Positions 14,974 to 44,006 of a stretch of 64,000 nucleotides of DNA are shown here, in pieces. The DNA comes from Macrostomum lignano. Taxonomy: Eukaryota. Made by a program: the position numbers and the translations under genes. The notes below the pieces were generated by a model. It saw only the letters and a program-made list of their open reading frames with translations, ran no database searches and had not been told where the DNA came from. Positions within the stretch are counted from its first letter, which is position 1. Each line of letters opens with the position of its first letter. The stretch spans positions 372,001 to 436,000 of the forward strand of contig NIVC01000754.1 of the NCBI GenBank assembly GCA_002269645.1, given 5' to 3'.

Positions 14974-15574
14974 TACCCAATGAAAAGAGCGAATTTCTTT
15001 GGTGGGCACTACTTCAAGTAAACTGTGTGCATGTCACAGTGGCTCGCTGGTCTATTTTCTTATTTCTTTTCTTTTTTTACATCTTCAGGCCCGTAGGCCA
15101 GTTACTTCATTGGAATATGATTAACCACTGAAATAAATCTGCCATTAAAGTAAAATGCTTTAAAGTAACGCAGCATGAAGTTCTTTGTAAATCTGCAATG
15201 CGACTGAGTTTCATTCAAAAGTTTTGTAATATACAGTACTGTATGTCATGCAGTTACGGGCCCACTCATCATTGCAAATCAGCTCAATTGATGCAGCTCT
15301 AAATGAATGTACGGGCTGGGCTGTACATTGGATAAAGAGATAAGAGAGACAAAGCTGCATTATCCTCATCTGAGGCTCGCCTGCAGCTTGGAGAGCAACT
15401 TTTGGGAAAAGAGAATATTCCTGGCTTTTATTTCCTGGCTGGTCATAAACTCTTCTTCCCCTTGTCCTGCGGTTGTCGTAGCAACATGGGGATGAGGGGA
15501 CACGAAGCGATTGAGGAAATAAAAAAGAGAGGCCCGCTGGCTCATGAGATGCGGTGTGGCACCCCGAGGCCGAG

Positions 15575-17591
15575 ATGACAGCCCAGCAGCTGCAGCAGCA
15601 GACGTCTGCTCTTGCTCAAGCAGAACGTCGCAATAAGGCGGAGTCTGAGGCCCTGCAACATCGCCTGAGCTACCTGGAGTGGCGCCAGCGCGGCCTAGTC
15701 ACCAGGCACAACTTCCGGGCAGACGATCTGCGAAGGAATGCCAAGATTTTCGACTACACTTCGGGTAAGCTTTGCAGAGTATTTTGCGATGCCTTTCCTA
15801 GCAATCGACTGTATAGTCCGACACTATATCTTTCCGACACTGCATATCTCCGACACTGCATATCTCCGACACTGCATATCTCCGACACTGCATATCTCCG
15901 ACACTGCATATCTCCGACACTGCATATCTCCGACACTTCATATTTTCGACACTGCATACCTTCGACACTGTATATCTCCGACACTGCATATCTCCGACAC
16001 TGCATATCTCCGACACTGCGTATTTCCGACACTGCTTATCTCCGACACTTCGTATTTCCGACACTGCATATCTCCGACACTGCATATCTCCGACACTGCA
16101 TATCTCCGACACTGCATATCTCCGACACTGCATATCTCCGACACTGCATATCTCCGACACTGCATATCTCCGACACTGCATATCTCCGACACTGCATATC
16201 TCCGACACTGCATATCTCCGACACTGCATATCTCCGACACTTCATATTTTCGACACTGCATACCTTCGACACTGCATATCTCCGACACTGCATATCTCCG
16301 ACACTGCATATCTCCGACACTGCGTATTTCCGACACTGCTTATCTCCGACACTTCGTATTTCCGACACTGCATATCTCCGACACTTCGTATTTCCGACAC
16401 TGCATATCTCCGACACTGCATATCTCCGACACTGCATATCTCCGACACTACATATCTCCGACACTGCATATCTCCGACACTACATATCTCCGACACTGCA
16501 TACCTCCGACACTGCATATCTCCGACACTGCATATCTCCGACACTGCATATCTCCGACACTGCATATCTCCGACACTGCATATCTCCGACACTGCATATC
16601 TCCGACACTGCATATCTCCGACACTGCATATCTCCGACACTGCATATCTCCGACACTGCATATCTCCGACACTGCATATCTCCGACACTGCATATCCGTG
16701 ACAGGCCTAACCTTCGCCCTAGCTCTAAAGGAAGTATGAAGTGCCGAAGTTATGAGAGAAGATACGAAGATATGGAGATGTGTAATTTTGGAGATATGAA
16801 GGGTCGGAGGTATGAAGTGTATGCCATGAAATTTTGGAGAAATTAAACTCCTTACTTAGAAAATGTCGAATTTTTATGTCGAGGCTGGTGGCCTGGTGTT
16901 AGGGAGATTTTCTGTTCTATCTCAAGTTTTTAGCTGTCCATGTTTCGAAGTCCTAGCAGAGTCCTAAGCGGATAAATGAGAATGAGAAACAAAAACCACT
17001 CTCAATATTCAATGCTCAATCAGGTGAATGAAAGGCCCGAGTCAACTCATGACGCACTCAATTCCAACAGGCAGCAGTCACTGCTCGGAGGCCTGTGAGT
17101 CAAAGCCCAGCGGCTATCCTCAGCTGCACGTCAGGAAGGACTACTCAACGCCCAAGCTGATGAGTTCCAGCGGTTTCCAAACCCCGGAGCCAATCAAAGA
17201 GCAGTCAGGACAGCAGCGCACTCTCAAATGGGACTCAAAGTGCGCCCGGACTCTTGCCGAACCCGCTCTAGACGAGCAGCTATTCTCCATGGCCAACATG
17301 CGACGCTGGAGAAGCCAGGGCGGTTCGGGTCTCGGTCGTCAGGCCAATCACCTTCATCTGCCCAGCCTGGAAGCCATCAACGAAGGTGCCGCCGTTCGTA
17401 GCTACCGACTCAGCCGACGGAGAGCTCAATTCTTGGCAACCAGGGCGCGTCACTGCTCTGGACGGTTGCGCCTGCTTGAGCTGAAGAAGCGACAGGCAGT
17501 TGCCGACCAGGCCGATGCTGCCTCCACAACCAGCGAGGTCGAACTGCTGCCGAAATTGAAAGGCTTTGGAGAGCTGATGAACCTTCGCTAG
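15575..17591 (+). CDS. Hypothetical two-exon protein (~236 aa), no recognised domain
   Basis: Exon 15575-15764 (MTAQQLQQQ...KIFDYTS G|gtaag, phase 1) joins in frame to acceptor ccaacag| at 17071, continuing to the stop at 17591. Both segments are GC-rich and coding-like. Confidence 0.5.
15830..16697. repeat. 16-bp minisatellite (ccgacactgcatatct)n
   Basis: About 54 units filling an intron; produces the spurious HCISPTLHISDTAYLR ORFs. Confidence 0.97.
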
Positions 17592-18289
17592 ACAGTCCAT
17601 ATAAGCGTCTGAAGCTCGTGCAAAACAATTTTAAGCATAAGGACACGGGTTTTCATTGTATTAGCGCGATAGTAACATTGCCCAGTTCTTTAGCACTAAA
17701 TTAAACATGACTCGACTAATACACTTTCGAGTTAAGAATAAAACAACTGTATGTGTTTCGCCAAATAAAGTCAAAGAAATATTGTTGGAGTTAAGGAATA
17801 GTTGACTGCAGGAGACAGGAAACATGTACGCTGTGTTAGTATACATGCAGGACGAAGCGTTGGATTTCGCCATAGACTAAATCCATCGAAATGCGCTATG
17901 ATAGAGACAGGAATTGAAGAGAATCAACTTTAGACATTCCGGCAAGTTTTGCAATGAAGTGAGTGAGTGCAGAGTTTGTCTATTTGGGTTTTTTAATACA
18001 ATGCGTTTGAAAAAAAATTTTGTGTGTTAGCAGATAAAAGAAAATACGAGCTAAATTATATACTCGCTTCACACCTCATTTCCACAAAAAAATTCTCATA
18101 AAGACTTGTTGATATTTGTTATCTGCAAAGCTGCTAAAGTGAAAATGATGGTAAGAATCGAGAGTGCTAAACTGTGCGTTACGGGTTAGAATACAGAGTC
18201 AGACCATTTTGACAAAAACATTTCGTTGTCATTAGTTGTGTCGATGTATCAGAGGCGAGACTCAGTAAGCCATACACAGCATCCGGAAT

Positions 18290-20067
18290 CTACTTCCTCG
18301 CTGCGTTCATCGCTCGTGCACGTCGCAGATGCATCTCCTCGTCGGGAGCCACCAGACTGTGCCAGCAGCACTTCGACACCGCCTGCTGCTGCTGCTGCGC
18401 CTTTGACTCGGTGATGCTCAGCCAGTGTTCCCGAGCTAGTCGGAAGCGCCGATCGCTCTCGCCACTCGCTCCGTCATCATCGGCTGAAAGCTCAACCGAG
18501 CCGACCGCTTGCTTACTGCGCAGGAAGTCGCTGACGTGCACCAGGCTGAGCCGGAGGGCGCAGTGCCGAAGTCGATCAGCTGGCATGGCTGGGAAGCTGA
18601 ACTCCTCGTTAAAGTAGGGGTTGCGGCTCTTATCCACAGTGTCGCTCCGTTTGACGTGGATCGGTCCGTTCGGCTCCATCAGCATCAGCTCAACGTAGGT
18701 GTTGGGCAGGTTGTGCTTGTCCAACTGTCCGTCGGACTGTTTCAGGTGAACACCTGTAGGTTTATTCAGCAATTTAATAAACTTTCTGCTGCATAGAATG
18801 ACTCAGGCTACTTAATTAGGTCACATTGCCTAAACAGGGTAAAAGCTACATTCTGCAAAGCTCCTATCGCAGCTATAGGGGATTAGGGTCGCAATTTAGT
18901 CTAGAAAATGGGAGTTTAGAGTGTTCAGGCTCGAGTTGTCTCTGGCTTAAAGTTTCTACTCCATATACTTTCTGGGCCAGTGCCAAAGTTCTTCACACCT
19001 TTGCACTCGATAACTCGTACCATCAGCGGCGCTTCATCAGCGCCGCCCCGACGCAGCAGCACGCAGATTTCGCCTGGGCCGCAGTCTGCCGCCAAGCCGC
19101 GCTTCAGCCTGCGGCGGAACACGTGCTTCTCATCCGTCGCAGTGTTGAGCAGCAGGTCGTCGATCTCATTTCCGTAGCGCCGATCCTCCAGATTGTGCCG
19201 GCACCGGGCCAGGAGCGCCGGCTCCTTGGACACTTCGTCGCGGTCGTAAACTTCGAACTTCACCGCGGCCTTGGTGAGGTCGGCCTTGGCCAGCTTGAAG
19301 CTGCAGGGATAGTTGAACTCCGGACTGGTTGTGCCTCGCTCCACAGGCGTGGCGATTGCCTCCGTCTCGCTCAGGGCAGCGCCGGCCCCGTCCTTGCTCA
19401 CAATCCGGACCAGAATATAAGGGTTGAGCGTGCCCGATATGTTTCTAGGCAGATCTGTGCAGCCTTTCACAAGCACGGTGAGTTCTTCAGTATCCTGGTT
19501 GTAGGTCATCAGGTACCGGATGACACCGTAGGGCGAGGGGCAGTCAGCGATGGCGGCCTCCTGGCAGAGTGAGCCGCCGTCGGACGAGCCGTCTCCCAAA
19601 TCGGCCTTGCCACCGGATGAAAATCCTTTCCGACATGGGCAGTCGACGCTGTTGCACAGCGGCGTGCAGACGATGCACAGAAGCACCAGGACGACAAGCG
19701 ACACGCATCCGGCGGAGATGCTGGCGATGAAGAATGGCTTGGAAATCCACCAGTACTTCGGTTTCGATGTAGTCTTGCCCCGTGATTTCGTTTCAATTGG
19801 CGACGCACTGCCGATGGCTGATTCCGTAGATCCGTTGATGCGGCTTGTCGACGATGATTTCAAAGCACTGGTAACGATGCTCTTCAGCTGGAGCAGTTGC
19901 TCTCGCTGCTTCCCGGTGGCATGGTGCTTGACGGGAGTCGGGACAGGAGTTGAGTACTCCAGCTCACATGTCACCGGTTGCGCGATATGAACGATGAAGA
20001 AAATCAAAAGAAATAGTTTAAATCTGCTGAAAACTCTAACAGAGTTTGTCAAAGGTGGCTTCACCAT
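18290..20067 (-). CDS. Synaptotagmin-like membrane protein with tandem C2 domains
   Basis: Exons 20067-18969 and 18753-18290 (phase 1). N-terminal hydrophobic segment; TM helix FFIASISAGCVSLVVLVLLCIVC; C2A (YNQDTEELTVLVKGCTDLP...NPYILVR...TTSPEFN...FEVYDRD); C2B (LMVRVIECK...NTYVEL...SRNPYFNEEFSF...VGSVEL). Confidence 0.85.
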
Positions 20068-21451
20068 CTTCTAATCCGAGTCTTGACAGCAGAATCTCTT
20101 TCACTGCTTTGAGAGTTTACGCTTTTATGACAAAGATTTCTTTACCTTGACCCATTCAATATCAGCTAAAATTGGACTGCCTAAAGGTAGATGCTTGAAT
20201 GAAGCGAAGAATCTAAATAATATAGACTTTATTGTGCTCTGGCCCAGATGCAGAAAGTTGTTGCAGTATAAATCTCAAAATTCTTCTCTTATTGTCCAGT
20301 CCACCTAATTTGCCTATCTTGAGTGTCTCAGACCTCGACTGGGCCTGGCTGGCAGCGCAGCGACAAAAGAAGCACGTTAAAGCAGAGCAATGTGCAGAGC
20401 TGCTCAACTTTTCCGGCCCACTCCCCCTTATTTACATTTACGCCCCACTGCGCCTGCATACCTGCAATTGTTGCTAGTTTGAAGCAACCTCGTTAATCTA
20501 AGCATGCTGCTTGTTGTTTCGCCGACAACTTAAAAAACGAATATTTTACTACTAGTAGCGTATATAAAATACATTTTCATTGTCTTTTGGGATCGTGGGA
20601 AAGAATCACTGTAGAACGATGGTTTCGCAGGGAAGTGACTTCGAATGAATTCAATATTGCTGAGTATTTGGCTGCCTATCCTTAACTCTTCTTAACTGTC
20701 GTGCGATTTACACCCATAAAGACACCCTACAGCCCTCCTCGAACATGATTACTAGCCTAAAGCTTCTGTCCTTACGTTTGTGGAGTCGTGGATTCGTGTG
20801 GATTCTTGTGGAGAACGTGTGAATTCTACCTCCGTCAGTCAGGACAGCCTACCTGATCTCTGAAAGAATCTGCGGCGTTGCTTGCAGGGTTGCCCTTCAC
20901 TCTATGAGAGCGGTCCTGCAGTCTGAGGCGCTACCAAACCACCAGAGGTTGGTGGTCCAGACCGTCTTGTTTTGCAACAACGATGAGATTTTGGGGCCGA
21001 CGGACGTCGATCTTTGGGCATAGAAGTCACGGCAAGTCACACCGGGCTGGTCCATCTAATCGACCTTTTCAAGCTATATCAACTGCTTCTAGTCCTCCTA
21101 AAGTCTAAAATTTGAACTTCAATTCAAACATAGATTCTATTTCTGTAGAATTAAATTGTCTGCATCAGAAAATCAATTCCAATCCAGTCCTATCCAAGAA
21201 TTAACCACATAAAGAGACAATCCGGTGTGGAGCATGTACATGTAGATAAACACAGACTTCTTCAACACGACTACACTACTGCAGTTAAGTAGCAACATGA
21301 GATTGTTTATGACTGCGTGTTTCTCATACTAGACATATACAATAGAGTCTATAAAAGCTTGAGCAGTCAAAAGCCTCCGCTCTCAGCTCAACACCAGGCA
21401 ATAGCAGTTCAATTTTTCCTCTCGAAAAAATCCGCTTGTTTCCAAACGATA

Positions 21452-24400
21452 ATGGGCTCTGGTAGCTCAGTAAATTCCCAGGTAAGAAGCTTATGAAGCA
21501 CGTCTAAGTACCATTCTTTTACAATAGTCAAGATGTATTAAAGGTATAATGCTATTTGAGGATCGTTATTACAGGCATATTGCCGTTTGAGGATCGTTAG
21601 TACAGGCACAATCCCGCTTGAGGATCGTTAGTACAGGCACAATCCCGCTTGAGGATCGTTAGTACAGGTACAATGCCGCTTGATAATCGTTAGCACAGGT
21701 ACAATGCCGCTTGAGGATCGTTAGTACAGGTACAATGCCGCTTGAGGATCGTTAGCACAGGTAAAATGCCGCTTGAGGATCGTTAGCACAGGTACAATGC
21801 CGCTTGAGGATCGTTAGCACAGTTACAATGCCGCTTGAGGATCGTTAGTACAGGTACAATGCCGCTTGAGGATCGTTAGAACAGGTACAATGCCGCTTGA
21901 GGATCGTTAGTACAGGTACAATGACGCTTGAGGGTCGACTGACGAAGCTCTTTTTAGAACGTATCATTCTTTCGCTTTGAATCTTAAACTTTATTCTTAG
22001 GCAAAATCTGACACGGTTGATGAGTCAGCAGCCTTGCAGCGACTCGCTAAGCTTGTCATTCAAGGCGACTTTGGACAAGTGCGACAGCTGGCGATGCGCC
22101 GGTTAGTAAAGTCAAAAGATGGAAGTGGACGCACCGTTTTGATGCTAGTGGCTGACACTCGTGGAACTCCTTTGCAAGCTGAAAAGTGCATCTTGTACTT
22201 GTTTGAGCTCGGCGCGGATCCTAAAGCATCTGACGCAGAGGGCAACACGGCTGCTCACCTGGCAGCCCGCCGGGACCACGTGCGAGTGCTGGCGCTGCTG
22301 CCTTTCGAGGCGAAGTGGCTGCAGAACGAGCGGGGACGCACTCCGCTGATGGAGGCGGTGCTTTTTGGCAGCTGGAAATGCGCCAAGCACCTGCTGCACC
22401 TGCTGAGGCAGGAGAGGTTCATAGACGAGTACAGAGGCGTCAGTACAGCACGACAACTAGGCAGGTTTCTAAAGGCCAGCTACACTGGCGATATGAGTCG
22501 AAACCCGATGAGGCAGAAGTTTTTTGGAATGAAGGACCAAAATGGTCAGACGGCGCTGGAGCTGGCGAAATTCAAGGGCTACTCAGAGCTGGCCAGCTAT
22601 ATAGAACGGTGAGTGAGTCTGGTGTGTAATCTGCCCTGCTTTACTTTCTGGCTTTACAGAATATCATTCTCAAGAATAGCTGGTTTTGTCAATACGAGCG
22701 TATAACACGAGATTTTTTGGATTTTTTCTGCAGCGAGATGCGTCTGGATGTGGTCGCGATTGGGTTAATCAACGGTCTGACGAAGCAGGTAAGCCTCGTT
22801 CGCTGGTGCGTGTCTCTTATTTACCATGTGGCAATGCATCTACTACTTAAGGGATCGGCAAACTTTTTTACCTCAAGGAAGGGCCAGATAAAGAACCTAG
22901 CTGCGGTCTAGATGAGAGAGGAAATGAGATAATAGATGAGGGAGAAGATGGGGAGAGAGGAGAAAAGAGAGTTGAGAAGAAACCTCCTGATCTACTTAAC
23001 GTCGATTTCCTGTTAACTAATCGCTGCAGGAAGAGGCCGACAGAGAGAAGCTGGAGTGCCTGGCCCGGGAGGGCAACGTGGCGACGCTGCTGCGGCTGGT
23101 GACGCGCGCCAACTGCGATCTGCCTAGCAGAGCCGGTCACACCATGCTGATGCATCTAGTTCGGAGTGTCGAAATTGAAAACGCGTCCGTTTGGAAGCAG
23201 CTGCTGAACCTGGCTGACCCAACCTGCGCCGATATAAATGCCAACACCTGTGTGCATCACGCAGCCGAGGCAGGAAACGACTCGGCGATTGTCGCACTGC
23301 TAAATGCAGGAGCCGCCGCCAATGCCACAAAGGACAACGGCGAGACTCCCCTGATCGCGGCAGCCTCCAACACGCCCATTCGAAGAGCCTTCTTGACAGG
23401 GTGGTTCCTGTTGGCTGGAGGCGCCGATTGGAGTCTGAAAGACTCCCGTGGCTGCACTGCCTATGAAATTGCCCTCGAATATGATAAGGAGGATCTGACC
23501 GACTTACTGCAACCGTGAGTTTACATTTACCGCTCTTTATGGGCAAGTAATTTGCTCTGAAGGTGTTTCTACGAGCGTAAGTTGCCCTTGACTTCACTTG
23601 CTGATCGAAGTGACACGGGAAGATATTAATATAACAATCAAGTTCAATATAGCTCGCATGACCTGCAACATCGAAAAGTCGCCATCACAGAAGATTCCGT
23701 CTGTGATCGCTACTTTCGAAAGCGCTGGTAAAGTCTCAATCTTTGCGAGTGACGCAACTCAGCTACGCCACGGCAGACTTGAGTTGAGGAATGAAGTGGG
23801 GGGAAGCGGTGTGCGAGGGTTGGACGGATTAAAGCTACCCGAGTGGCGACGTTGCTATGTTGCTGAGTATATTTTAGGACTTTCGGATGTTTTAGTACAT
23901 TTCCCATCGAAAAAAGGTTATCAAAGAGTTGATTTTGTACTTGGCTCATATTGTCCAACTGCAAAACTGCTTGACAAATCTAACGTGCATCAGTAACAAT
24001 TACCTTTTCGCTTGCCTGTTTCAGGTACCAATCGAAAAAATTCTTTGACGAGACTCCGAATCTGCCGTAAGTGTTGATTGAGATTTGTCTTGTACTTATA
24101 GCTCGTACTAGTAATTTTAAGTATAGGCGGATTGTTTAGAACAATGCTCTCATCCTTGTAGATGGAAAACGCGGCGAGGAGCTCAGACAGACGACATCTG
24201 GGACGAAGATGAGAGCTGGCAAGTCATACTACTGCAGATTGAGAGTTGGACCAGTGAAGGACACTCTGGTTTTATAGATTTATGCGACCTATTTCTAGAT
24301 TCAGAAAGCTAAAAATTGATAAAAAGCAACAGGTTAACGAGTATAGTTAGTACTTGAATTTAATCTGATTTAATCAATTTCAGGTCGCCTGAAAGAGCGG

Positions 24401-25986
24401 AATTTCCGGAAGTTCAGCCGTCAACAGGCTCTCAAAGCGGTGCTACGACCAGACAGACGAACTGGTAAGCCACGAGGTCTCGCTTGCTTGCTTAAATGTA
24501 CTATTGGATTTTTTATTTGAGACATCGTCGAGACTATAAATAAGGTCTAAGTTAGGCTTAGTGTTCTTTTATTGGCTTAAAAAGACTGAATCTGAGGAAG
24601 TCCATAGACCCGAGGAAGGCCAATGATCTAATGAAGTCCATAGATCTGAGCTATGGAAGCCCATAGACCTGAGAGGAAGCCCATAGATCTGAGGAAGCCC
24701 ATAGACCTGAGAGGAAGCCCATAGACTATAAACTTTTAAATCTGTGAAAGCAGCTTTTCTCGTGAATAAATTATATGAACCCACGAAATTATTTTACCTT
24801 TTTATAAAAACTATTAGGTATATAAATAATAAAATATAGAAAAATATATAAGGTTGGAGAGAATTTCTCGGGTTTGGTAATATATAATTCAGTTTCAATC
24901 GCTATGCCCAATTCCAGGAGCGAAGAGGAGTTCTACCCAGTTACGAACCGCAGGGATTCTGCATCATCATCAACATTGGCAAATACGAAGAGTTAAAGCA
25001 CAAGGAGGGAGGCACAGCCATCATCGATCCAGAGATACGTGAAGGATCGGCGAAGGATGTGCAGCTAGTGAGACAAGTATTCGAGGAGCTTCGTTTCATT
25101 GTCAAAGTTCGGGAAGACCTCAAAACTCAGGAGATCGACGACTATCTCAATGACGTAAAGAGATCAGAGGAGCTCAACAAGCACGGCAGTTTTGTCTGCT
25201 TTTTAATGGCTCACGGCAGCCACGACTGCATCTACGGAGCCGATTGGGTTCCTTATCCCATCGATAGGATCGTTGATAAATTTCAGGTAATTTAAAAATG
25301 CAGATTTTTATTGACAAAAACTACGGTAATTAGTCTACCAGTCTTATTGTCGTCAATGGTAATTATTTGTATTGTACTTTTCTGAGTATCTGGGTGGTCT
25401 TAAGCGGGTTGAGGGACGCTACACAATCGCAAAAAATGTGTAATTTGTTACTCTAGGGAAAAATCTGCAAACTAATTTTCACGAATTCGCTGTTTCAGTC
25501 CTACTTCTGCCAGGCTCTGTCCAGGAAACCGAAAATCTTCTTCATTCAAGCCTGTCGCACCAACACTTTAGCCGCTGCACGCTCCACCATTCGCTCCGAC
25601 CGAGTCCCAGCCATGGGACAAGGCCAGACTCGCTCCACTCAAGAAGCTGGAGAGTCCAGCGTGACCTTCGATGCAGCCGCACTTGCTCCCCTGAGAAACC
25701 GAGACTTATGTCCGGCCGAAGGCGACTTTCTGCGCTGTTTCGCCAGCACACCGGGCTCCGTCGCCATAAGAGACACCCACAGGGGCTCGCCATTTGTGCA
25801 GATTCTTTGCCGCTTCATGCAGCAGCACTACAAGGTGCACGACGTGTCGCACATCATGACAAAGTAAACAACTTTCTGCAGAAGAATTCTGTTGAGACCG
25901 GCGATGGCAAGTTGCAGTCTATTGTGACGCAGAAGGTGGACCAGCTGGCACGCCGGGTCAGCTTTGATCCCAGCAGGGCCAGCTAG
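21452..25986 (+). CDS. Ankyrin-repeat caspase (putative fusion, ~870 aa), N-terminal myristoylation motif
   Basis: Phase-consistent exons 21452-21481 (MGSGSSVNSQ), 22001-22608, 22734-22788, 23030-23514, 23563-23576, 23611-23992, 24025-24066, 24162-24218 (GC donor), 24384-24464, 24918-25286, 25499-25986. Eight TPLH-like ankyrin motifs; caspase p20 with FLMAHG and QACRT; p10 with PAEGDFL...STPGSVAIRD...GSPFVQ. Restoring 1 nt at ~24949 and 1 nt at ~25863 gives 2613 nt (871 codons). Confidence 0.72.
21550..21932. repeat. 31-bp intronic minisatellite (gaggatcgttagtacaggtacaatgccgctt)
   Basis: About 12 units in intron 1 of the ankyrin-caspase gene. Confidence 0.92.
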
Positions 25987-27574
25987 GCCTCTCAAAGCCG
26001 GGTGACGTCTCAGTGAAGATTTTTTCTGAAGGAACTTGTTGTCAAATTGTTGTTAAAATGTACTCTTTATTCAGAATTTGACAGACCGTGATGATACGAA
26101 GTACGTTTTTCACCGGTCTCCTGCCCTTTAGGCCTATTTAATCTCGTCTTTTACGTCGTACTTTTTCGGTAGATTGATTTAAACAGTGTTTATTTGTTAA
26201 ATTTTTTGTTTGTATTCTTGAAATCTCAAAAACTGATTGCTGTTTTTTCGTTCTTGTTTTAGATGTGAAATCGAGCATCTTAAGATTCTGTGAACTGTGC
26301 TTTTGTGCTTAAAAGAATATTTATTTGTAACTACGCAATAATATATCTGCTTATTTCAAAATATTTATCAATTTTGCCCCCACCCTTGTGTTGTCGCTAA
26401 GGAAAAAATTGTGTCGCTAAAAGTGCATAAAAATGACGATGCTGTAAATATTTGAAACCGTTTTTTATTTATCCTAAATCCTTAGATATAGATTAATGCC
26501 TTAATTCATAGTCTTTCGTGTAGTAGCAAGCCGTGTGTGCGATGAAATGCAAGCTGCTAGACAATGAATGGAGCGGCTTCTCCCTCAGATCTGATGTGCC
26601 GAAAAGGTGCTTGGCATATTTTTACAACCCTGGGTCGCGCCTGGCCCAACCAACAAAAGGCTTGCACAACAATGGGCATAGAGTGAGTTCAATAGCGGCT
26701 TTAACTGCAAGCGGTTACCATAGTAACTGTACAGGAAATTGTCCAGGCCTCTCGGGCGCTGCTATGCTGATGTTCAATATTAAATTATAACAGTACTGTA
26801 CAGTTTAACTGCCACACACTTCCGTCTCCTCTCCCTGTACTGTACACACCGCTTTATCGATCGTCCCAAACCCCTTCTTGACTCCTAATTCCAGCCACCC
26901 CTGTCCCTTTATCTCTAAATAGGATGTCATTGGTTACGCTCAGGACAGGCTTCTTGCTCCAATACCTGGCTGCTCCTGCATTCTCGTTAATTTCACCCAG
27001 TAACAATAACAATAAAAAATAGTTCTGCCCGCGACTCTATAGACCATAGCGCTCACGTGATTTAAATTTTTTTTGTGCTTTAAAAGTACGTATAGAGTGA
27101 AACCATCTGCAACTATTACTGTTGTTAGTAGGCATTTGTGATTCGTTAGTGGCTTTAGCACAAGGGGGCTTTAGCATTAATGGCTTTAGCACTAGGAGCT
27201 TTAGCACCAAGGGGCTTTAGCACCAGGGGTTTAGCACCAGGGGTTTAGCACCAGGGGGCTTTAGCACCAGGGCTCCAGCTCAGTTCTAAGATAATCGATT
27301 GTTATCGTCACTTCATTTCAGAATTTCGAACCACTTGAGGTACTAAATTCACTAATAAATCGAAATTCTGGTCACTAAATATATCAAGCAGTTGGTCGGA
27401 CCCGCAAAACTCATCCTTACTATACACCAGAATTTAGAAATACCCGAATAGAGATTCCCTTTTCCATTTAAAGAAGTATTGTAGTATGAATGGAAAATAA
27501 TAGCAATTCCTTAATATTTCAGCCAATTACTTTCTCACTGAAATTGACGGACAATAATAGAACGAAGACCTCAA

Positions 27575-27780
27575 AAGAGGAGACAGGAGAGCAGATGAGA
27601 TGAGAGAGGAGAGGAGAGGAGATGAAAGGAAAGGAGAGCAGAGGAGGGGGGAGAGGAGAAGAGGAGAGGACAGGAGAGGTGAGAAGATGAGAGGAGAGCA
27701 GAGGAGAGGAGAGAGGAGGAGAGGAGAGAAGAGAGGAGAGAAGGAAAGGAGAGGAGAGAAGGGAAGAGGGAAGAGGAGAT
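27575..27780. repeat. GA-rich simple repeat
   Basis: (gagag/gagga)n run. Confidence 0.9.
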
Positions 27781-27785
27781 TCGAC

Positions 27786-27969
27786 TAGGGAGCTGCAAAG
27801 AGACACAAACCTCGTGCGGGCCGGATTGCAATGCTAATGCGAAGTTTTAAAGGACCAGAGAGCCAGACAAGGACTACTTAACAACAACAATGTTAAGTAG
27901 TACTTGGAGCCGGATAGATAGCCTTCGCGGGCCGCATGTGGGCCGCGGGCCAATGTTTGCTGTCCCCTA
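27786..27969. mobile_element. Probable hAT (Charlie-like) MITE remnant
   Basis: Imperfect terminal inverted repeats TAGGGAGCTGCAAA / TTTGCTGTCCCCTA and the subterminal motif gcgggccgcatgtgggccgcgggcc typical of Charlie-type hAT ends. No target-site duplication seen. Confidence 0.4.
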
Positions 27970-28255
27970 CCTTAAAAGACAAATAAAAGTGCATTGATGA
28001 CGCATTGCAAAATTGTACAGTATTATTCTCTATCTCCTACTTACGTCAGTAGCAAAAAGCTATTGCACGGAAAAAGAAATGACAAGTAATGTACGAGTAC
28101 TTCTAGAATAGAGTAAGAGATGGTAGGATAAAGTAACCCCCATTCTCATGGCAACCTGCACAAGCCTACAAAAGCAGTCACTGGGGCAGGTGCGCTAGTG
28201 GAGCGGATTCTGCTTTTTGTGCAAGCCAGCTCAGCTAAGAGATTTGACAAGTCCA

Positions 28256-29914
28256 ATGTCTTCTAAAAGAGCCACTGGTGTTGCAAGTCTCAATTTGGAA
28301 GTGAAAGAAATGTCTTCTAAAAGAGCCACTGGTGTTGCAAGTCACAATTTGGAAGTGGAAGCAAAGCTTAGCGGCACTACACGGTCCACTAGCCAATCTT
28401 CTAGTAATTATTCGACCCGAAGAACAAGAACACAGGTTGACGATGTGGATGAGCTATCAAATTACGAGAAACAGGAAAATTAGTATGTTTTTTACACAAA
28501 TTTTGAAGAAGTCTCGTATTTTTCGTCTTTAAAAAGTTAATAAAATTTGGCCAATATTGTTTGAGCAGCCGGAGTACGTCGTACGCAAAACCTCGGGAGA
28601 CGGACATTAACAATCCTGGGAGTTACGAGAGTCCAGACCTGTATCCACAAGGTGCCACCGGAGTCTCTCGAAAAAGTGGAGGACCGTCAATATGGTAATC
28701 TCAGAAGCTTCTCTCTGAAACTCTCTGAGTGTTCACTGAATGATTTCTTTCGTACTCGTATTTTAGGCTAGACGAGGACTACTACAAAGTGACCAATCCT
28801 CAAGGATTCTGCATCATTGTCAACATCAACAAGTACACGGCTACTAGCGATATCACAGTCAGCCACGAGGAGCGCGAAGGTTTCCAGCGGGATGTAGATC
28901 GAGTGACCGAACTCTTTGGGAAGCTCCAATTCCGCGTCAAAAAGCAGGAGGACCTCACTGCCGAGGAGATCGACGACTTTCTCAGCGAGGTGAAGCGATC
29001 GAAAGAGCTGGCCAGACACGGCAGCTTTGTTTGCTTTTTTATGGCTCACGGCAGCCACGACTGCATATACGGCAGCGACGGCGTCCCGTATGAGATCCGT
29101 AAACTTACCGAGAGGTTTCAGGTTAGCATTGAACATTCTGTCTGAACTCCTTGTTATTAGCAATTGGAAGAATGATCTTGCCCGACATTTGAGCACGCAG
29201 CCAAACCCAGAATTCCACACAGCTGGTGCACATATGCATCGTCTCTTTCATCGACGGACCTCTCGGCTGATGACGGTACATGTACAGTGTTCTACATACT
29301 CTAGCACAATGGTGGCATGAGTCAAAGAAACTTCCACTTGCTGAGATGCCGTTAAATTTACTTTTGCTCTGGTCTGCTTTTTTAAAAACATATTTTGTTC
29401 AAGCAATCTTAGCCTATGCTCAACCATACCTTCTCAGGCCTCCGTCTGCAAAAGTCTGGCTGGGAAGCCAAAGATTTTCTTCATCCAGGCCTGCCGCGGC
29501 AACAGAATCGGTAGTCGGAGCTCAAGAATGAAAACTGACAAGCTTTCTGCGCCAGCCTGCCGAAATGCTGCATCGGCAGTCGAATACTCCACTATGAGAA
29601 CTGATGAGCCGCCAGCCCCAGTGCTCGACCCGGCCATCCACCCCGCTGAAGGAGACTTCCTGCTCTGCTTCGCCAACACCCCGGGCTCAGTGGCGTTCCG
29701 AGACACCGCCGAAGGCTCCGTATTTGTGCAGACTCTGTGCAGTTATATTGAAACAGATTTCAAGCGGCACGATCTCGGCTACATCATGACCAAGGTGAAC
29801 CGGCACCTGCAGAAGGAGCCAGTCCAGATCGATAACAAACTGTACCACGTCGTACCGCAGAAGGTTGACCAGCTCGCTTATAAAGTCAGTCTCGATCCCA
29901 GGAGGGCTCTTTAG
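28256..29914 (+). CDS. Caspase (paralog of the upstream ankyrin-caspase) with Ser/Thr-rich prodomain
   Basis: Exons 28256(start uncertain)-28482, 28569-28694, 28767-29121, 29438-29914, all in phase. FFMAHG, KPKIFFIQACRG and PAEGDFLL...GSVAFRD...GSVFVQ motifs are intact. It shares intron positions (TG|G before p20; FQ| within p20) with the upstream caspase. Confidence 0.9.
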
Positions 29915-30078
29915 AAACTGAGACTGCAGCTTAAATGATAGCAAAAATTTGACAAAAGCAAAATAAACTTTTTTTGCTTGATCAAAACTTTTTTATCCGT
30001 TTGTAACCTTCTGTAACCAGCATATTGATACATATCTGCGAGTATATTCAATTTATGAACAAGTTAAGTTTAACCCAA

Positions 30079-30370
30079 GGGGGTTGCAGCCTTTGTGGTT
30101 AGAGCGTCTGACACACGACTGAAAGGTCGGGGGTTCGATTCTCGACCCATTCGCGACAATTTTTGTCCTTGAGCAGGACGCTTAACTCTACATTGCTTCA
30201 GTTCACCCAGCTGTAGAATGGCTGCCAGCATTAGCTGGGGTAATTGACTGTGGCGACCCCCCCCCCCCCAGTGCTTGGACTGAACAGCCGTACGCAGCCT
30301 TCAGATGCACCGCGCAATAGCTGTCGGTTGCTCATCCGCCCATTTGGGCAAATGTAATTAAATAATGTTT
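30079..30370 (+). mobile_element. tRNA-derived SINE copy 2
   Basis: GTGGTTAGAGCGTCTGACACACGACTGAAAGGTCGGGGGTTCGATTCTCGACC plus central domain TGTCCTTGAGCAGGACGCTTAACTC...CAGTTCACCCAGCTGTAGAATGG and an AT-rich tail; homologous to 10550-10846. Confidence 0.78.
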
Positions 30371-31064
30371 TAATTTTAATTTTAACAATTATAATTAAAC
30401 CTCTTTAGCCTCTATAAAACTCGAAAAAATGCCTCGTATTCCCTGGTTTTAAATTTTGCAACGCACCGTACAATGTATACAATATTTTTGCCTCTAATAT
30501 AAATGTATTATCGATACCAAATCCGCGAATTTACTGATGGAACGGCAAATTTTGTTTGGGATTTGTTCCCTAATTCTGTTTTCAATCTTATCAAGCGCTG
30601 AGGCAAGATCTACCGCTATTATACAGCGTTGAGTAAATTAAACCTGACAGAGATGTATTCCTTGATCCCATTCCTTGGCTACAACCCACACCCACACTTA
30701 GGGGTTCTCGGGTTCGCTAACGCTTTCGAACTCAAATTCCATCCTGCATCAGAAAGCCCTGGTGTGCTCACAATCAGAATCCAATATAGCTCTGACAGCA
30801 ATATTGATGGAGATGATGGATATTGGGATAACAATGGCTCTATTGCCTAGTTAAGAATTTACAACATCAACTGCAGGCTGCCTAACTAAGGCTATCGTAT
30901 GAGTGCACACCAGCCACTAGGGTAAACCGAACCATGCTCTGCATTCAAAGTACATTAAATCCAGTTGCGTACACAGCAACTTTAACTGGAGGAGTGGCAA
31001 CATTAATGGGGGTACCAATATTTGGTTTCTTAGTTCGCGCATCTATCTCGTACTTGTAGTTTGG

Positions 31065-33406: not shown

Positions 33407-36400
33407 ATGAGCAGTGCAACTATTAAAAGTCAACAATCTGCATTGGAGCAGTCGCTTCCATCGATTGAACTGCTAGCATATGCTGCATGGTTTGTCATCG
33501 TGCTGGCTAGCGTGGGCCATGCTTTCAAGACTCAGATTATTCCTGAGAGCCGTGAGTAGCTATTTCTATTTTAGCTCTGAAGCCTGTTGATTCATGCTCC
33601 GTTCTCAGATCCTCAGTTGCTGGGTCAGCCTCCCAGATCCTCAGTTGCTTGGCCAGCCTCCCAGATCCTCAGTTGCTGGGCCAGCCTCCCAGAGTGTCAG
33701 TTGCTGGGCCAGCCTCCCAGAGTGTCAGTTGCTGGGCCAGCCTCCCAGATCCTCAGTTGCTGGGCCAGCCTCCCAGAGTGTCAGTTGCTGGGCCAGCCTC
33801 CCAGAGTGTCAGTTGCTGGGCCAGCCTCCCAGATCCTCAGTTGCTGGGCCAGCCTCCCAGATCCCCAGTTGCTGGGCCAGCCTCCCAGATCCTCAGTTGC
33901 TGGGCCAGCCTCCCAGGTCCCCAGTTGCTGGGCCAGCCTCCCAGATCCCCAGTTGCTGGGCCAGCCTCCCAGATCCCCAGTTGCTGGGCAGCTGGGCCAG
34001 CCTCCCAGATCCTCAGTAGCTGGGCCAGCCTCTCCCAGATCCCCAGTTGCTGGGCCAGCCTCCCAGATCCTCAGTTGCTGGGCCAGCCTCCCAGATCCCC
34101 AGTTGCTGGGCCAGCCTCCCAGATCCTCAGTTGCTGGGCCAGCCTCCCAGAGTGTCAGTTGCTGGGCCAGCCTCCCAGAGTGTCAGTTGCTGGGCCAGCC
34201 TCCCAGAGTGTCAGTTGCTGGGCCAGCCTCCCAGATCCTCAGTTGCTGGGCCAGCCTCCCAGAGTGTCAGTTGCTAGGCCAGCCTCCCAGAGTGTCAGTT
34301 GCTGGGCCAGCCTCCCAGATCCTCAGTTGCTGGGCCAGCCTCCCAGATCCCCAGTTGCTGGGCCAGCCTCCCAGATCCTCAGTTGCTGGGCCAGCCTCCC
34401 AGGTCCCCAGTTGCTGGGCCAGCCTCCCAGATCCCCAGTTGCTGGGCCAGCCTCCCAGATCCCCAGTTGCTGGGCAGCTGGGCCAGCCTCCCAGATCCTC
34501 AGTAGCTGGGCCAGCCTCTCCCAGATCCCCAGTTGCTGGGCCAGCCTCCCAGATCCTCAGTTGCTGGGCCAGCCTTCCAGATCCTCAGTTGCTGGGCCAG
34601 CCTTCCAGATTCTCAGTTGCTGGGCCAGCCTCCCAGATCCCCAGTTGCTGGGCGAGCCTCCCAGAGTGTCAGTTGCTGGGCCAGCCTCCCGGATCCTCAG
34701 TTGCTGGGCCAGCCTCCCAGATCCCCAGTTGCTGGGCCAGCCTCCCAGATCCCCAGTTACTGCGCTGCCAGCCTCCCAGATCCCCAGTTGCTGCGCTGCC
34801 AGCCTCCCAGATCCCCAGTTACTGCGCTGCCAGCCTCCCAGATCCTCAGTTGCTGGGCCAGCCTCCCAGAACCCCAGTTGCTGGGCCAGCCTCCCAGATC
34901 CCCAGTTGCTGGGCCAGCCTCCCAGATCCCCAGTTGCTGGGCTACAGCACTCAAGATCACTGCAAGACCCGGAGACCGCATCACCTTCCAGTTCTTCGCC
35001 TGGACGCGGCAAGTCTGACGGACGGTATGTTCGGATACAAAATGGTATGAAAACAAATTCGTCATAATTTGTTCTCAAGACTTTGTTTTTTTTAAGCCCG
35101 ACTTCAATCGATTAAATCGCGCGCAATTATTGCAGGACAACACCTTTATTGACTGGAATCTCTACCTGAGTATGTTTGCTCCCATGCTGGCCTTGCTGGC
35201 CTTGCACCTGCTAATTAGCAGATTAGCGATGCGCTTCTGCAACGCCCAGGTACGAAAAAGGGTCAAAAAAGGTCATTCCAGTCGAAAGAAAAACACAATT
35301 TAGGTTTATTTTACTGAAATACTGTGATATTTCGGGTTTATGATATTTCGGGTTTATGATATTTCGGGTTTGTGTGATATTTCGGGTTTATGATATTTCG
35401 GGTTTATGATATTTCGGGTTTGTGTGATATTTCGGGTTTATGATATTTCGGGTTTATGGTATTTCGGGTTTGTGTGATATTTCGGGTTTATGATATTTCG
35501 GGTTTATGATATTTCGGGTTTATGATATTTCGGGTTTATGATATTTCGGGTTTATGATATTTCGGGTTTGTGTGATATTTCGGGTTTATGATATTTCGGG
35601 TTTATGATATTTCGGGTTTGTGTGATATTTCGGGTTTATGATATTTCGGGTTTATGATATTTCGGGTTTATGATATTTCGGGTTTGTGTGATATTTCGGG
35701 TTTATGATATTTCGGGTTTATGATATTTCGGGTTTGTGTGATATTTCGGGTTTATGATATTTCGGTTTATGATATTTCGGGTTTGTGTGATATTTCAGGT
35801 TTATGATATTTCGGGTTTATGATATTTCAGGTTTTTTTGATATTTCGGGTTTGTGATATTTCAGGTTTGTGATATTTCGGGTTTGTGATATTTCAGGTTT
35901 GTGATATTTCGGGTTTGTGATTTTTCGGATGTGTGATACTTAGGGTTTGTGATATTTCGGGTTTGTGATCTTTCGGGTTTTTGATTTTTCAGATGTGTGA
36001 TATTTCGGGTTTTTGTTATATTTCGGGTTTGTGATCTTTCAGGTTTGTGTGATATTTCGGGTTAGTGAAATTTCGGGTTTGTGATTTTTCAGATGTGTGA
36101 TATTTCGGGTTTGTGTGATATTTCGGGTTTGCGATATTTCGGGTTTGTGTGAAATTTCGGGTTTGTGATATTTCGGGTTTGTGTGATATTTCGGGTTTGT
36201 GATATTTCGGGACTCGGGTTTATGATGATATTTCGGGTTTGTGTGATATTTCGTGTTTGTGTGATATTTCGGGTTTGTGATATTTCGGGTTTGTGTGATA
36301 TTTCGGGTTTGTGATATTTCGGGTTTGTGTGATATTTCGAGTTTGTGATATTTCGGGTTTGTGTGATATTTCGGTTGTGTGATATTTCGGGTTTGTGTGA

Positions 36401-43963: not shown

Positions 43964-44006
<43 letters not shown>

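What the first reader, a model, noticed from the sequence alone, without database searches (positions are those of the whole stretch)
21452..25986. Myristoylated ankyrin-repeat caspase: a non-death-fold prodomain architecture
Seen: an 11-exon model in which every junction is phase-compatible links MGSGSS (MGxxxS myristoylation consensus), two blocks of four ankyrin repeats, a ~130-aa unknown region and a complete caspase. The caspase has His in AHG, Cys in QACRT rather than QACRG, the S1 arginines in REGSAKD and SVAIRD, and a candidate linker site VTFD/A. Established: initiator caspases normally use CARD or DED prodomains. Inference: a membrane-tethered caspase activated through ankyrin-mediated sensing or scaffolding, a possible alternative immune or cell-death module. 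Two 1-nt deletions need resolving before calling it functional.
Basis: partly seen in the sequence, partly recalled or inferred. Interest (0 to 1): 0.75.

Follow-up and report, generated by a model that had tools for sequence, protein, structure and literature searches.

The report
Flatworm ankyrin-prodomain caspase, already annotated
This is a real, transcribed flatworm (Macrostomum lignano) gene for a caspase with an ankyrin-repeat prodomain, a kind already described in flatworms; its two apparent frameshifts are most likely assembly errors.

Summary
The window is Macrostomum lignano assembly Mlig_3_7, contig NIVC01000754.1:372001-436000. The finding is GenBank gene BOX15_Mlig009377g2.

**Observation.** It largely holds. 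The gene has a MGSGSS start, two ankyrin clusters and a complete Asp-specific caspase domain (His, Cys in QACRT, both S1 Arg, VTFD|A). Two details are wrong: there are 9 exons, not 11 (one GC-AG intron), and the linker is about 60 aa, not about 130.

**Frameshifts.** Three sibling copies in the same assembly encode an intact 738-aa protein. The window copy has 0 private substitutions but 8 private short deletions. The frameshifts are therefore most likely PacBio consensus errors, not pseudogenisation. pN/pS among the copies is 0.11-0.30.

**Novelty.** "ANK caspases" of flatworms are published (Lee 2014; PMC11463336). That paper calls them parasite-restricted, so several ANK-caspase families in free-living M. 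lignano correct it. This gene's double-ankyrin module is lineage-specific. It is shared with more than 50 paralogues, many fused to MAP3K-like kinases, and is joined to the effector at a phase-2 intron.

**Untested.** Myristoylation and the activation mode remain inferences.

The parts
21350..21357 (+). TATA box (TATAAAAG), about 30 nt upstream of the annotated transcript start
   Evidence: Read directly from the sequence. The GenBank partial CDS starts at 21386.
21386..21481 (+). Exon 1: 5'UTR plus ATG at 21452. Encodes MGSGSSVNSQ, which fits the N-myristoylation consensus G-{EDRKHPFYW}-x(2)-[STAGCN]-{P} with Ser at position 6.
   Evidence: AF2 gives pLDDT below 50 for the N-terminal tail, so it is predicted to be flexible.
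22001..22608 (+). Exon 2 (phase 0 to 2): capping helix plus ankyrin cluster A. Contains the family-invariant GSWKCAKHLLHLLRQ motif (22367-22411).
   Evidence: Pfam Ank_2 6.3e-14; AF2; invariant columns.
22734..22788 (+). Exon 3 (phase 2 to 0): beta-hairpin connector between the two ankyrin clusters (EMRLDVVAIGLINGLTKQ).
23030..23514 (+). Exon 4 (phase 0 to 2): ankyrin cluster B.
   Evidence: Pfam Ank_2 1.7e-11; AF2.
24025..24066 (+). Exon 5 (42 nt, phase 2 to 2): conserved YxxKxFFDEtP motif that ends the shared module. In paralogues the effector (kinase or caspase) is attached after this exon.
24162..24218 (+). Exon 6 (57 nt, phase 2 to 2): acidic linker WKTRRGAQTDDIWDEDES. The donor is GC (TG|gcaagt).
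   Evidence: The GC donor is conserved in copy L001.
24384..24464 (+). Exon 7 (81 nt, phase 2 to 2): linker SPERAEFPEVQPSTGSQSGATTRQTN.
   Evidence: AF2 gives pLDDT about 25, so it is predicted to be disordered.
24918..25286 (+). Exon 8: start of the caspase large subunit. Holds S1 Arg (IREGSAKD, 25035-25058) and the catalytic His (MAHGSHD, 25206-25226). It is 1 nt short in this copy.
24948..24949 (+). CC run that is CCC in the three sibling copies. As assembled it shifts the frame and gives a stop at 24994-24996, which is the end of GenBank PAA77287.1 (500 aa).
25499..25986 (+). Exon 9: QACRT active site (25547-25561), long disordered inter-subunit linker with VTFD|A (25661-25675), small subunit with S1 Arg (SVAIRD, 25757-25774), and stop TAG at 25984-25986. 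It is 1 nt short in this copy.
25861..25863 (+). AAA run that is AAAA in the three sibling copies (siblings read IMTKVNNF).
28256..29914 (+). Tandem paralogue 'gene 2': an intact 4-exon, 395-aa caspase with a Ser/Thr-rich prodomain of about 120 aa and QACRG. Exons: 28256-28482, 28566-28694, 28767-29121, 29438-29914. The introns flanking the caspase exons have the same positions and phases as in gene 1.
   Evidence: It is not among the genes called in the GenBank record.

Best explanation
[quoted passage not shown] It is one of four syntenic copies, 98-99.5% identical, of a transcribed gene. The intended product is 738 aa, in this order:
- a Met-Gly N-terminus (MGSGSS);
- two ankyrin-repeat clusters joined by a beta-hairpin;
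- a disordered, acidic linker of about 60 aa, built from three phase-2/phase-2 cassette exons;
- a caspase-3/8-like domain with an intact His/Cys dyad (QACRT) and an Arg/Gln/Arg S1 pocket, so it is Asp-specific.

The two 1-nt deletions in this copy are most likely uncorrected PacBio/Canu consensus errors, not mutations.

**How the architecture arose (shown).** The double-ankyrin module is a lineage-specific unit. It is shared colinearly with more than 50 M. lignano paralogues. Each ends after the module, continues into a MAP3K-like kinase, continues into a caspase, or continues into kinase plus caspase. The effector is always joined at the same phase-2 intron after a conserved 42-nt exon. This is exon shuffling.

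**How it works (inferred, about 35-40% as a whole).** It is a long-prodomain, initiator-type caspase.
- Co-translational N-myristoylation puts the flexible N-terminus on a membrane.
- The ankyrin clusters bind a partner or ligand peptide and concentrate the protein.
- The flexible linker lets the caspase domains dimerise by proximity.
- The enzyme cuts itself at VTFD|A in the inter-subunit loop, and possibly at DIWD|E in the linker.
- It then cleaves downstream substrates after Asp.
For: **Identity.**
- Locus L003 of GCA_002269645.1 is 100% identical to window 15386-30996.
- The window's 9-exon translation is 500/500 identical to PAA77287.1, including the frameshifted tail.

**Intact siblings.**
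- PAA75565.1, PAA46841.1, PAA75242.1 and the ML2 models read NPQGFC and IMTKVNNF through both sites.
- All of them keep MGSGSS and QACRT.

**Error rather than mutation.**
- Over 4.16 kb the window copy has 0 private substitutions but 8 private deletions (seven of 1 nt, one of 2 nt). Its siblings have 14-19 private substitutions and 1-3 private indels each.
- Over a further 4.8 kb, the window and L001 differ by no substitution and only four 1-nt deletions.
- The assembly is Canu on PacBio reads, polished with Pilon (PMC5730564). Pilon is weak where reads map to several near-identical copies; that point is my own knowledge.

**Constraint.** pN/pS among the copies is 0.11-0.30.

**Domains and residues.**

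**Structure.**
- Ankyrin module: pLDDT 90.7, pTM 0.88.
- Best structural matches are DARPin-DARPin fusions, tankyrase ARCs and ankyrin-B.
- In the full-length model both linkers have pLDDT about 25 and pTM is 0.54, so no fixed Ank-caspase contact is predicted.

**Module sharing and exon phases.**

**Kinase type of the paralogues.** Best PDB matches are MAP3K2 and MAP3K5 at about 1e-27.

**MGxxxS motif.** It is also present in the divergent caspase-fused subfamilies P0013 (MGSAASS) and P0030 (MGSWFSK). It is absent from 8 full-length family members without a caspase.
Against: - No sequencing reads were available, so the error call is statistical, not direct.
- GenBank annotates this copy as a truncated 500-aa ankyrin-only protein.
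- Myristoylation, membrane location, oligomerisation and autoprocessing are all untested.
- One of the four full-length caspase-fused relatives with this module starts MSSSS, not MG.
- The Gly-to-Thr change in QACRG is rare, and its effect on activity is unknown.
- A sister paralogue (P0020) has QAGRG, so some family members are catalytically dead.
- The nearest solved structures are executioner caspases-3 and -7. The catalytic domain itself therefore does not argue for an initiator.
- No binding partner of the ankyrin module is known.
Confidence: 0.6

Rival explanations
1. This particular copy (g2) is a true, recently pseudogenised duplicate. The deletions are real, and the locus makes only a 500-aa ankyrin-only protein or nothing.
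For: - Both deletions are present in the deposited sequence, and GenBank annotates the truncated product.
- Other coding sequence in the window shows no frameshift: GUF1 matches TIGR01393 over positions 3-593 of 595 in one stretch, and gene 2 is intact.
- By position alone, two hits falling in 0.86 of 4.74 kb of coding sequence has p of about 0.03.
Against: - A branch with 0 substitutions and 8 deletions is not how sequences diverge. The siblings show about 1 indel per 10 substitutions.
- Haplotypes that are otherwise identical and were assembled twice differ only by 1-nt deletions, about 0.4 per kb.
- Six of the 8 private deletions lie where the contig switches from L002-like to L001-like sequence, which suggests a poorly resolved consensus.
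- There are no in-frame stops or other lesions, and all catalytic residues are kept.
Confidence: 0.12
2. The gene is intact, but the ankyrin module is not a membrane-proximal oligomerisation platform. It acts instead as a ligand or effector sensor, or as a decoy. On this view the gene belongs to an expanded, fast-evolving innate-immunity-like family that works like an NLR without the NTPase and couples recognition to a caspase or a MAP3K-like kinase.
For: - The expansion is large and lineage-specific: 52 clusters at 90% identity in M. lignano, with the next best hit elsewhere only 75 bits.
- The effectors are interchangeable.
- Copy-number and structural variation is seen between copies.
- Molluscs have caspase + STAND NTPase + ankyrin proteins of NLR-like layout.
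Against: - The ankyrin module is strongly conserved, with many nearly invariant columns, and is under purifying selection. It is not hypervariable, as sensor surfaces usually are.
- There are no expression or infection data.
Confidence: 0.2
3. The enzyme is an executioner-type or substrate-targeting caspase. The ankyrin module recruits substrates or holds the zymogen inactive, and an upstream protease activates it by cleavage.
For: - The catalytic domain is most similar to caspase-3 and -7 among solved structures.
- There are Asp sites in the linker (DIWD|E) and in the inter-subunit loop (VTFD|A).
Against: - A long prodomain and a long inter-subunit loop are typical of initiators (established knowledge of caspase-8, -9 and -2).
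- AF2 predicts no fixed Ank-caspase contact (pTM 0.54).
- In PMC11463336, ANK caspases group with DED caspases.
Confidence: 0.15
4. The fusion is an annotation artefact. The ankyrin protein and the caspase are separate products of a polycistronic, trans-spliced precursor.
For: - About 7% of assembled M. lignano transcripts are precursors that encode two or more proteins (PMC5730564).
- Several UniProt ML2 models at this locus are clearly wrong: P0006 mixes frames and P0350 merges genes.
Against: - One uninterrupted ORF crosses eight GT/GC-AG junctions with matching phases in three copies.
- The same junction is kept in paralogue subfamilies that share only 36-46% protein identity with this gene.
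- The caspase exon starts in mid-codon (phase 2), so it cannot be translated alone from that splice site.
Confidence: 0.03

Closest known systems
Platyhelminth 'ANK caspases' (Lee et al. 2014, Trends Parasitol; Genome Biol Evol 2024, PMC11463336)
   Same: A caspase whose prodomain is made of ankyrin repeats instead of CARD or DED, in a flatworm. It is proposed to be an initiator.
   Different: - The published clade is described as restricted to parasitic flatworms. This gene is from a free-living species.
- In my neighbour-joining tree the schistosomatid caspase P0194 has an ankyrin gene model ending 80 nt upstream. It groups with a different M. lignano Ank-caspase, Mlig019067 (bootstrap 90).
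- This gene sits in a Macrostomum-only clade (bootstrap 95).
- Its ankyrin module resembles that of Mlig019067 only at the level of single repeats (E about 1e-4).
- An MGxxxS N-terminus has not been reported for the published clade.
Death-fold initiator caspases (caspase-8/-10 with DED; caspase-2/-9, Dronc and CED-3 with CARD)
   Same: A long N-terminal interaction prodomain, a flexible linker, an Asp-specific catalytic domain, and an Asp site in the inter-subunit loop.
   Different: There is no death-fold domain. The prodomain is about 400 aa of ankyrin repeats. The active site reads QACRT. A lipid-anchor motif is present.
M. lignano 'kinase pro-domain caspase' (BOX15_Mlig018903; noted in PMC11463336)
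   Same: It lies in the same Macrostomum caspase clade. It has the same double-ankyrin module at the N-terminus (36% identity over 391 aa, E 1e-51).
   Different: A protein kinase domain lies between the ankyrin module and the caspase. It has no MG start.
Mollusc caspase + STAND NTPase + ankyrin proteins (Haliotis XP_048241358.1, Batillaria KAK7463151.1)
   Same: A caspase and ankyrin repeats on one polypeptide.
   Different: These are NLR-like proteins of about 2,000 aa with an nSTAND3 NTPase and more than 20 canonical repeats. The gene here has no NTPase.
Tankyrase ankyrin-repeat clusters (ARCs) and designed DARPin-DARPin fusions
   Same: They are the best structural matches. Both have two or more ankyrin clusters of about 5 repeats each, joined in series.
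   Different: The resemblance is in fold only (TM about 0.35, 19-25% identity). No shared function is implied.

Membership tests
Caspase (peptidase family C14A) | Pfam Peptidase_C14 match above the curated cut-off | tested here: met
   142.8 bits against a cut-off of 21.4, E 1.8e-41.
Caspase (peptidase family C14A) | Catalytic His and Cys, with Cys in a QACxG-type pentapeptide | tested here: met
   H in MAHGSHD and C in QACRT align to H121 and C163 of caspase-3. The fifth residue is Thr, not Gly. This is conserved in all copies and in Mlig001045.
Caspase (peptidase family C14A) | S1 pocket Arg/Gln/Arg that gives Asp specificity | tested here: met
   The R of REGSAKD, the Q of QACRT and the R of SVAIRD align to R64, Q161 and R207.
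Caspase (peptidase family C14A) | Proteolytic activity after Asp | not testable with these tools
   Needs recombinant enzyme.
ANK caspase (caspase with an ankyrin prodomain, as in PMC11463336) | Ankyrin repeats N-terminal to p20/p10 on one polypeptide | tested here: met
   One ORF over 9 exons in transcript-derived models of three copies. Pfam finds both Ank and C14.
ANK caspase (caspase with an ankyrin prodomain, as in PMC11463336) | Belongs to the monophyletic clade of neodermatan ANK caspases | tested here: inconclusive
   - Named neodermatan ANK-caspase sequences could not be fetched.
- One schistosomatid caspase with an upstream ankyrin gene model groups with Mlig019067, not with this gene.
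- The published tree puts Mlig018903, which is in this gene's clade, as sister to the ANK clade.
N-myristoylated proteins | Met-Gly start that fits G-{EDRKHPFYW}-x(2)-[STAGCN]-{P}, ideally with Ser/Thr at position 6 | tested here: met
   MGSGSSV is the first in-frame ATG. The same MGSxxS pattern is found in P0013 and P0030.
N-myristoylated proteins | Myristate actually attached to Gly2 | not testable with these tools
   Needs metabolic labelling and a G2A control.
Initiator caspases (functional class) | Long prodomain that mediates recruitment, with activation by induced proximity | not testable with these tools
   The long prodomain is present (about 450 aa before the catalytic domain). The mode of activation is unknown.
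Processed or unitary pseudogene | Disabling lesions that are real mutations, with relaxed constraint | tested here: not met
   - The lesions are private 1-nt deletions on a branch with no substitutions.
- pN/pS is 0.11-0.30.
- Private changes at otherwise invariant columns number 9, against 5-12 in paralogues.

The most novel reading that the evidence does not exclude
The double-ankyrin unit, with an N-terminal lipid anchor in some members, is a Macrostomum-specific signalling adaptor module. Exon shuffling at one phase-2 intron has joined it to a caspase, to a MAP3K-like kinase, or to both in series. The result is a large membrane-proximal death or stress-signalling family with no counterpart in model animals. 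Together with Mlig019067, the likely orthologue of the schistosome gene, it would show that ankyrin-prodomain caspases predate parasitism in flatworms and arose more than once.
Probability: 0.3. Interest if true: 0.55.

Novelty: new member of a known kind. Interest (0 to 1): 0.38.

Why it matters
- **Evolution of apoptosis.** A recent survey states that ankyrin-prodomain caspases are confined to parasitic flatworms and links their origin to parasitism. Several such families in free-living M. lignano, one of them probably orthologous to the schistosome gene, argue against that.
- **Experimental access.** M. lignano has transgenesis and RNAi. How a non-death-fold prodomain activates a caspase could therefore be tested directly in this species. 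The same holds for whether a caspase can be lipid-anchored.
- **Genome scanning.** Single-base frameshifts in this assembly should not be read as pseudogenes without comparing the sibling copies.

Tried and rejected
1. **Direct splice 23514 to 24918.** This skips the linker. It is phase-compatible and matches some ML2 models (P0004, P0039), but the transcript-derived GenBank models include exons 5-7.
2. **Exon 6 treated as a dead exon.** I first looked only for GT donors. The donor is in fact GC.
3. **Alternative path from exon 6 through a weak GT donor to exon 8.** This restores the frame without repair, but it loses the conserved EEFYPVTN and is unnecessary once the siblings are seen.
4. **Exon 7 read in another frame.** Rejected by the intron phase and by the GenBank models.
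5. **Pseudogene argument from intact GUF1 and gene 2 (p about 0.03).** Overturned by the four-copy comparison.
6. **P0006 (UniProt 'Polyprotein') as an independent check of the frameshifts.** It mixes frames and skips the second site, so it is uninformative.
7. **The look-up of encoding contigs for P0004 and P0006.** Nothing on record.
8. **Supplements of PMC11463336.** Not held.
9. **Literature search for Mlig009377.** No paper.
10. **Search for reports of naturally myristoylated caspases.** By title and abstract none of the ten listed papers concerns a lipid-anchored caspase, and the exact phrase 'myristoylated caspase' occurred in only one of them; I did not open them.
11. **Full-length profile search of 1.84 billion representatives.** Giant ankyrin proteins crowded the list. 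Of the 20 Ank/caspase candidates whose source I looked up, all ten 'ankyrin prodomain + caspase' hits were from M. lignano; the two mollusc hits were NLR-like.
12. **Bacterial-type promoter and terminator scan.** Not relevant to a eukaryote.


Full report
**Source and identity**

The caspase part of the model finds only Macrostomum lignano proteins as close relatives. A look-up of the GenBank protein PAA77287.1 (BOX15_Mlig009377g2) returned a locus of assembly GCA_002269645.1 (Mlig_3_7), contig NIVC01000754.1:387386-402996. That locus is 100% identical to window 15386-30996. The window is therefore NIVC01000754.1:372001-436000.

Translating nine exons of the window from 21386 reproduces PAA77287.1 exactly, 500 of 500 residues. 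This includes its out-of-frame tail ...FYPVTNRRDSASSSTLANTKS*.

**Check of the observation**

The exon table is below. All introns are GT-AG except one GC-AG after exon 6.

| Exon | Coordinates | Note |
|---|---|---|
| 1 | 21386/21452-21481 | 5'UTR and ATG |
| 2 | 22001-22608 | ankyrin cluster A |
| 3 | 22734-22788 | beta-hairpin connector |
| 4 | 23030-23514 | ankyrin cluster B |
| 5 | 24025-24066 | conserved 42-nt exon |
| 6 | 24162-24218 | linker, GC donor |
| 7 | 24384-24464 | linker |
| 8 | 24918-25286 | caspase, large subunit |
| 9 | 25499-25986 | caspase, active site to stop |

- Pfam finds ankyrin repeats in exons 2 and 4 and Peptidase_C14 (E 1.8e-41) in exons 8-9.
R of REGSAKD is R64, H of MAHGSHD is H121, C of QACRT is C163 and R of SVAIRD is R207.
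- VTFD|A aligns with the conserved xxTD|E site in the inter-subunit loop of the paralogues.
- MGSGSS is the first in-frame ATG, in a good Kozak context. A TATA box lies about 30 nt upstream of the annotated transcript start.
- AlphaFold2 folds residues 1-407 with pLDDT 90.7 and pTM 0.88. The fold is two clusters of 4-5 ankyrin helix pairs, each preceded by a long helix, joined by a beta-hairpin encoded by exon 3.
- The best structural matches are DARPin-DARPin fusions, tankyrase ARCs and ankyrin-B.

There are 9 exons rather than 11. The 'unknown region' is about 60 aa (exons 5-7) rather than about 130. The long ORF at 23592-23993 is intronic and has no Pfam match.

**The two frameshifts**

A CC run at 24948-49 and an AAA run at 25861-63 are each one base shorter than in the three sibling copies of the same assembly:

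| Copy | Locus | Contig |
|---|---|---|
| g3 | L001 | NIVC01000875.1 |
| g1 | L002 | NIVC01004683.1 |
| g4 | L004 | NIVC01000894.1 |

The siblings are syntenic, with the same C2-domain gene upstream. They encode an uninterrupted protein of 738 aa counted from MGSGSS.

I first leaned towards a pseudogene. GUF1 (TIGR01393 positions 3-593 of 595 in one stretch), gene 2 and the ankyrin exons show no frameshift. The four-copy alignment reverses that view.

- Over 4.16 kb the window copy has no private substitution at all but eight private deletions: seven of 1 nt and one of 2 nt.
- Each sibling has 14-19 private substitutions and only 1-3 private indels.
- Downstream, over 4.8 kb, the window and L001 are identical except for four 1-nt deletions, two in each.
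- The window copy is also a mosaic. It is L002-like before about 23.7 kb and L001-like after about 24.65 kb. Six of the eight private deletions lie in the switch zone.

Mlig_3_7 is a Canu assembly of PacBio reads polished with Pilon (PMC5730564). Residual single-base deletions in four-copy regions are what that procedure leaves; this last point is my own knowledge. I put about 85% on assembly error and about 12% on a real pseudogene copy.

In either case the gene as such is intact and under constraint. pN/pS among the copies is 0.11-0.30.

**One transcript?**

The GenBank annotation is a filtered genome-guided transcriptome. Names with the same prefix mark transcripts that are at least 95% identical. 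Models g1 and g3 carry the ankyrin module, the linker and the caspase in one ORF. The caspase exon begins in mid-codon (phase 2). The same junction is present in divergent paralogues. A chimeric model is therefore very unlikely.

**The family**

The ankyrin module is a lineage-specific unit. Fifty-two protein clusters of M. lignano match it at E below 1e-34. The best hit outside the genus scores 75 bits.

Members fall into these types:
- ending after the module;
- continuing into a protein kinase;
- continuing into a caspase;
- carrying an SH3 domain in front;
- in Mlig018903, carrying kinase and caspase in series.

The kinase is closest to MAP3K2 and MAP3K5 among solved structures (E about 1e-27).

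Exons 1-5 have the same lengths and phases in a kinase-fused member (P0015) and in caspase-fused members (P0020 and this gene). The effector is attached at the phase-2 intron after a conserved 42-nt exon that encodes YxGKxYFDEP. The linker exons are phase 2-2 cassettes. This is textbook exon shuffling. It also explains why some models lack the linker.

The MGxxxS start occurs in three divergent caspase-fused subfamilies with this module: this gene, P0013 (MGSAASS) and P0030 (MGSWFSK). It is absent from eight full-length members without a caspase.

In the full-length AlphaFold2 model the two folded parts are joined by a linker with pLDDT about 25. The inter-subunit loop is also disordered, and no fixed contact between the two parts is predicted (pTM 0.54).

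**Comparison with what is known**

Caspases with an ankyrin prodomain ('ANK caspases') were first noted in Schistosoma (Lee et al. 2014). They were analysed across 60 lophotrochozoan genomes in PMC11463336. That paper calls them a clade-specific feature of parasitic flatworms, with one annelid case. It reports for M. lignano only a 'kinase pro-domain' caspase, sister to the ANK clade. So the architecture is not new.

What the present analysis adds:

1. M. lignano, a free-living species, has at least six ankyrin-caspase gene groups with GenBank or UniProt entries. These are Mlig009377, 007583/016858, 006631, 000705/009621, 019067 and 001045, plus the Ank-kinase-caspase Mlig018903. Its 'kinase' prodomain also contains the ankyrin module.
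2. A rough neighbour-joining tree of catalytic domains was built (247 columns, 100 bootstraps). Most of these genes, together with Ras/Roc- and LRAT-fused caspases and the short-prodomain gene 2, form a Macrostomum-only clade (bootstrap 95).
3. In the same tree, Mlig019067 groups (bootstrap 90) with a schistosomatid caspase. Its gene model starts 80 nt after the end of an ankyrin gene model on the same strand, which suggests a split ANK caspase.
4. The ankyrin module of the window gene resembles that of Mlig019067 only at the level of single repeats (E about 1e-4).

The window gene is therefore an ANK caspase by architecture. It is probably not the orthologue of the published parasite clade.

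Outside flatworms, the profile search also found mollusc proteins that combine a caspase, an nSTAND3 NTPase and more than 20 ankyrin repeats. These have a different, NLR-like layout.

**Mechanism**

- *Shown:* the domain order, the catalytic and S1 residues, the disordered linkers, the shared module and its exon logic, and purifying selection.
- *Inferred:* N-myristoylation and membrane attachment; partner binding by the ankyrin clusters; proximity-induced dimerisation; autocleavage at VTFD|A; an initiator role.

I give the whole inferred chain about 35-40%. The main alternatives are a sensor or decoy role for the ankyrin module in an immune-like expanded family, and an executioner-type enzyme whose ankyrin module recruits substrates or inhibits the zymogen.

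**Verdict**

It is already present in public annotation, and it belongs to a published kind. The frameshifts are most likely artefacts. Interest is moderate. The value lies in correcting the 'parasite-restricted' claim and in offering a tractable organism for testing how an ankyrin prodomain, and possibly a lipid anchor, controls a caspase.

Noticed in passing
window 28256-29914 (+): A second, intact caspase gene lies 2.3 kb downstream. It has 4 exons and encodes 395 aa, with QACRG and a Ser/Thr-rich prodomain that contains a 54-nt tandem duplication. It is not among the genes called in the GenBank record. In UniProt A0A1I8IPY8 it is merged with gene 1.
   Followed up: partly
L002 9226-10594 (NIVC01004683.1), corresponding to a point between window 27209 and 28349: One sibling copy carries an insertion of about 2.5 kb upstream of gene 2. 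The insertion encodes an ankyrin half-module, 98% identical to residues 747-850 of A0A1I8IPY8. This is structural variation that gives the downstream caspase its own ankyrin block.
   Followed up: partly
window 1-9900: A large A-poor satellite with GC 0.60 and AT skew -0.59. It is built from 15-nt (TTGCAGCGCGTCTCT) and 21-nt (CGTCTTCGGATTGCCAGTCTG) units in higher-order repeats of 90 and 111 nt. It is open in several reading frames only because stop codons are absent.
   Followed up: partly
window 10000-64000, e.g. 21542-21937, 24600-24720, 33606-34942, 55983-57052: About 60 separate minisatellite arrays with 16-47-nt units. They include arrays inside introns 1 and 7 of the caspase gene and inside the introns of GUF1. 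The array length in intron 7 differs by 76 nt between copies.
   Followed up: no
window 40400-44230 (-): An intact orthologue of GUF1/LepA (translation factor EF4). It matches TIGR01393 over positions 3-593 of 595 at 689 bits. I used it as a control for frameshift errors.
   Followed up: yes
window 18290-20067 (-): A C2-domain gene (510 aa in GenBank) lies upstream, in divergent orientation. It is present in copies g2, g3 and g4, which shows that the copies are syntenic.
   Followed up: partly
window 47003-47590 (-) and 53005-53577 (-): One ORF has a Peptidase_M54 (archaemetzincin-like) zinc-binding region (E 8e-7). Another ORF has a very weak 7tm_1 match (E 0.009).
   Followed up: no
window 21940-26100 compared with L001, L002 and L004: The window contig is a mosaic of two sibling haplotypes. 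It is L002-like 5' of about 23.7 kb and L001-like 3' of about 24.65 kb. This is either a recombinant copy or a chimeric consensus.
   Followed up: partly
M. lignano proteins P0255 (BOX15_Mlig000293g2), P0096 and P0020: Other unusual caspase architectures occur in the same species: Ras/Roc GTPase + caspase, and LRAT + caspase. An ankyrin-caspase paralogue has its catalytic Cys replaced (QAGRG) and has lost the linker Asp, so it is a likely pseudo-enzyme.
   Followed up: no
L007 1-15495 (Heterobilharzia americana OX104127.1): The public annotation splits what looks like the schistosomatid ANK caspase into two adjacent gene models, 80 nt apart: an ankyrin model (494 aa) and a caspase model (254 aa).
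   Followed up: partly
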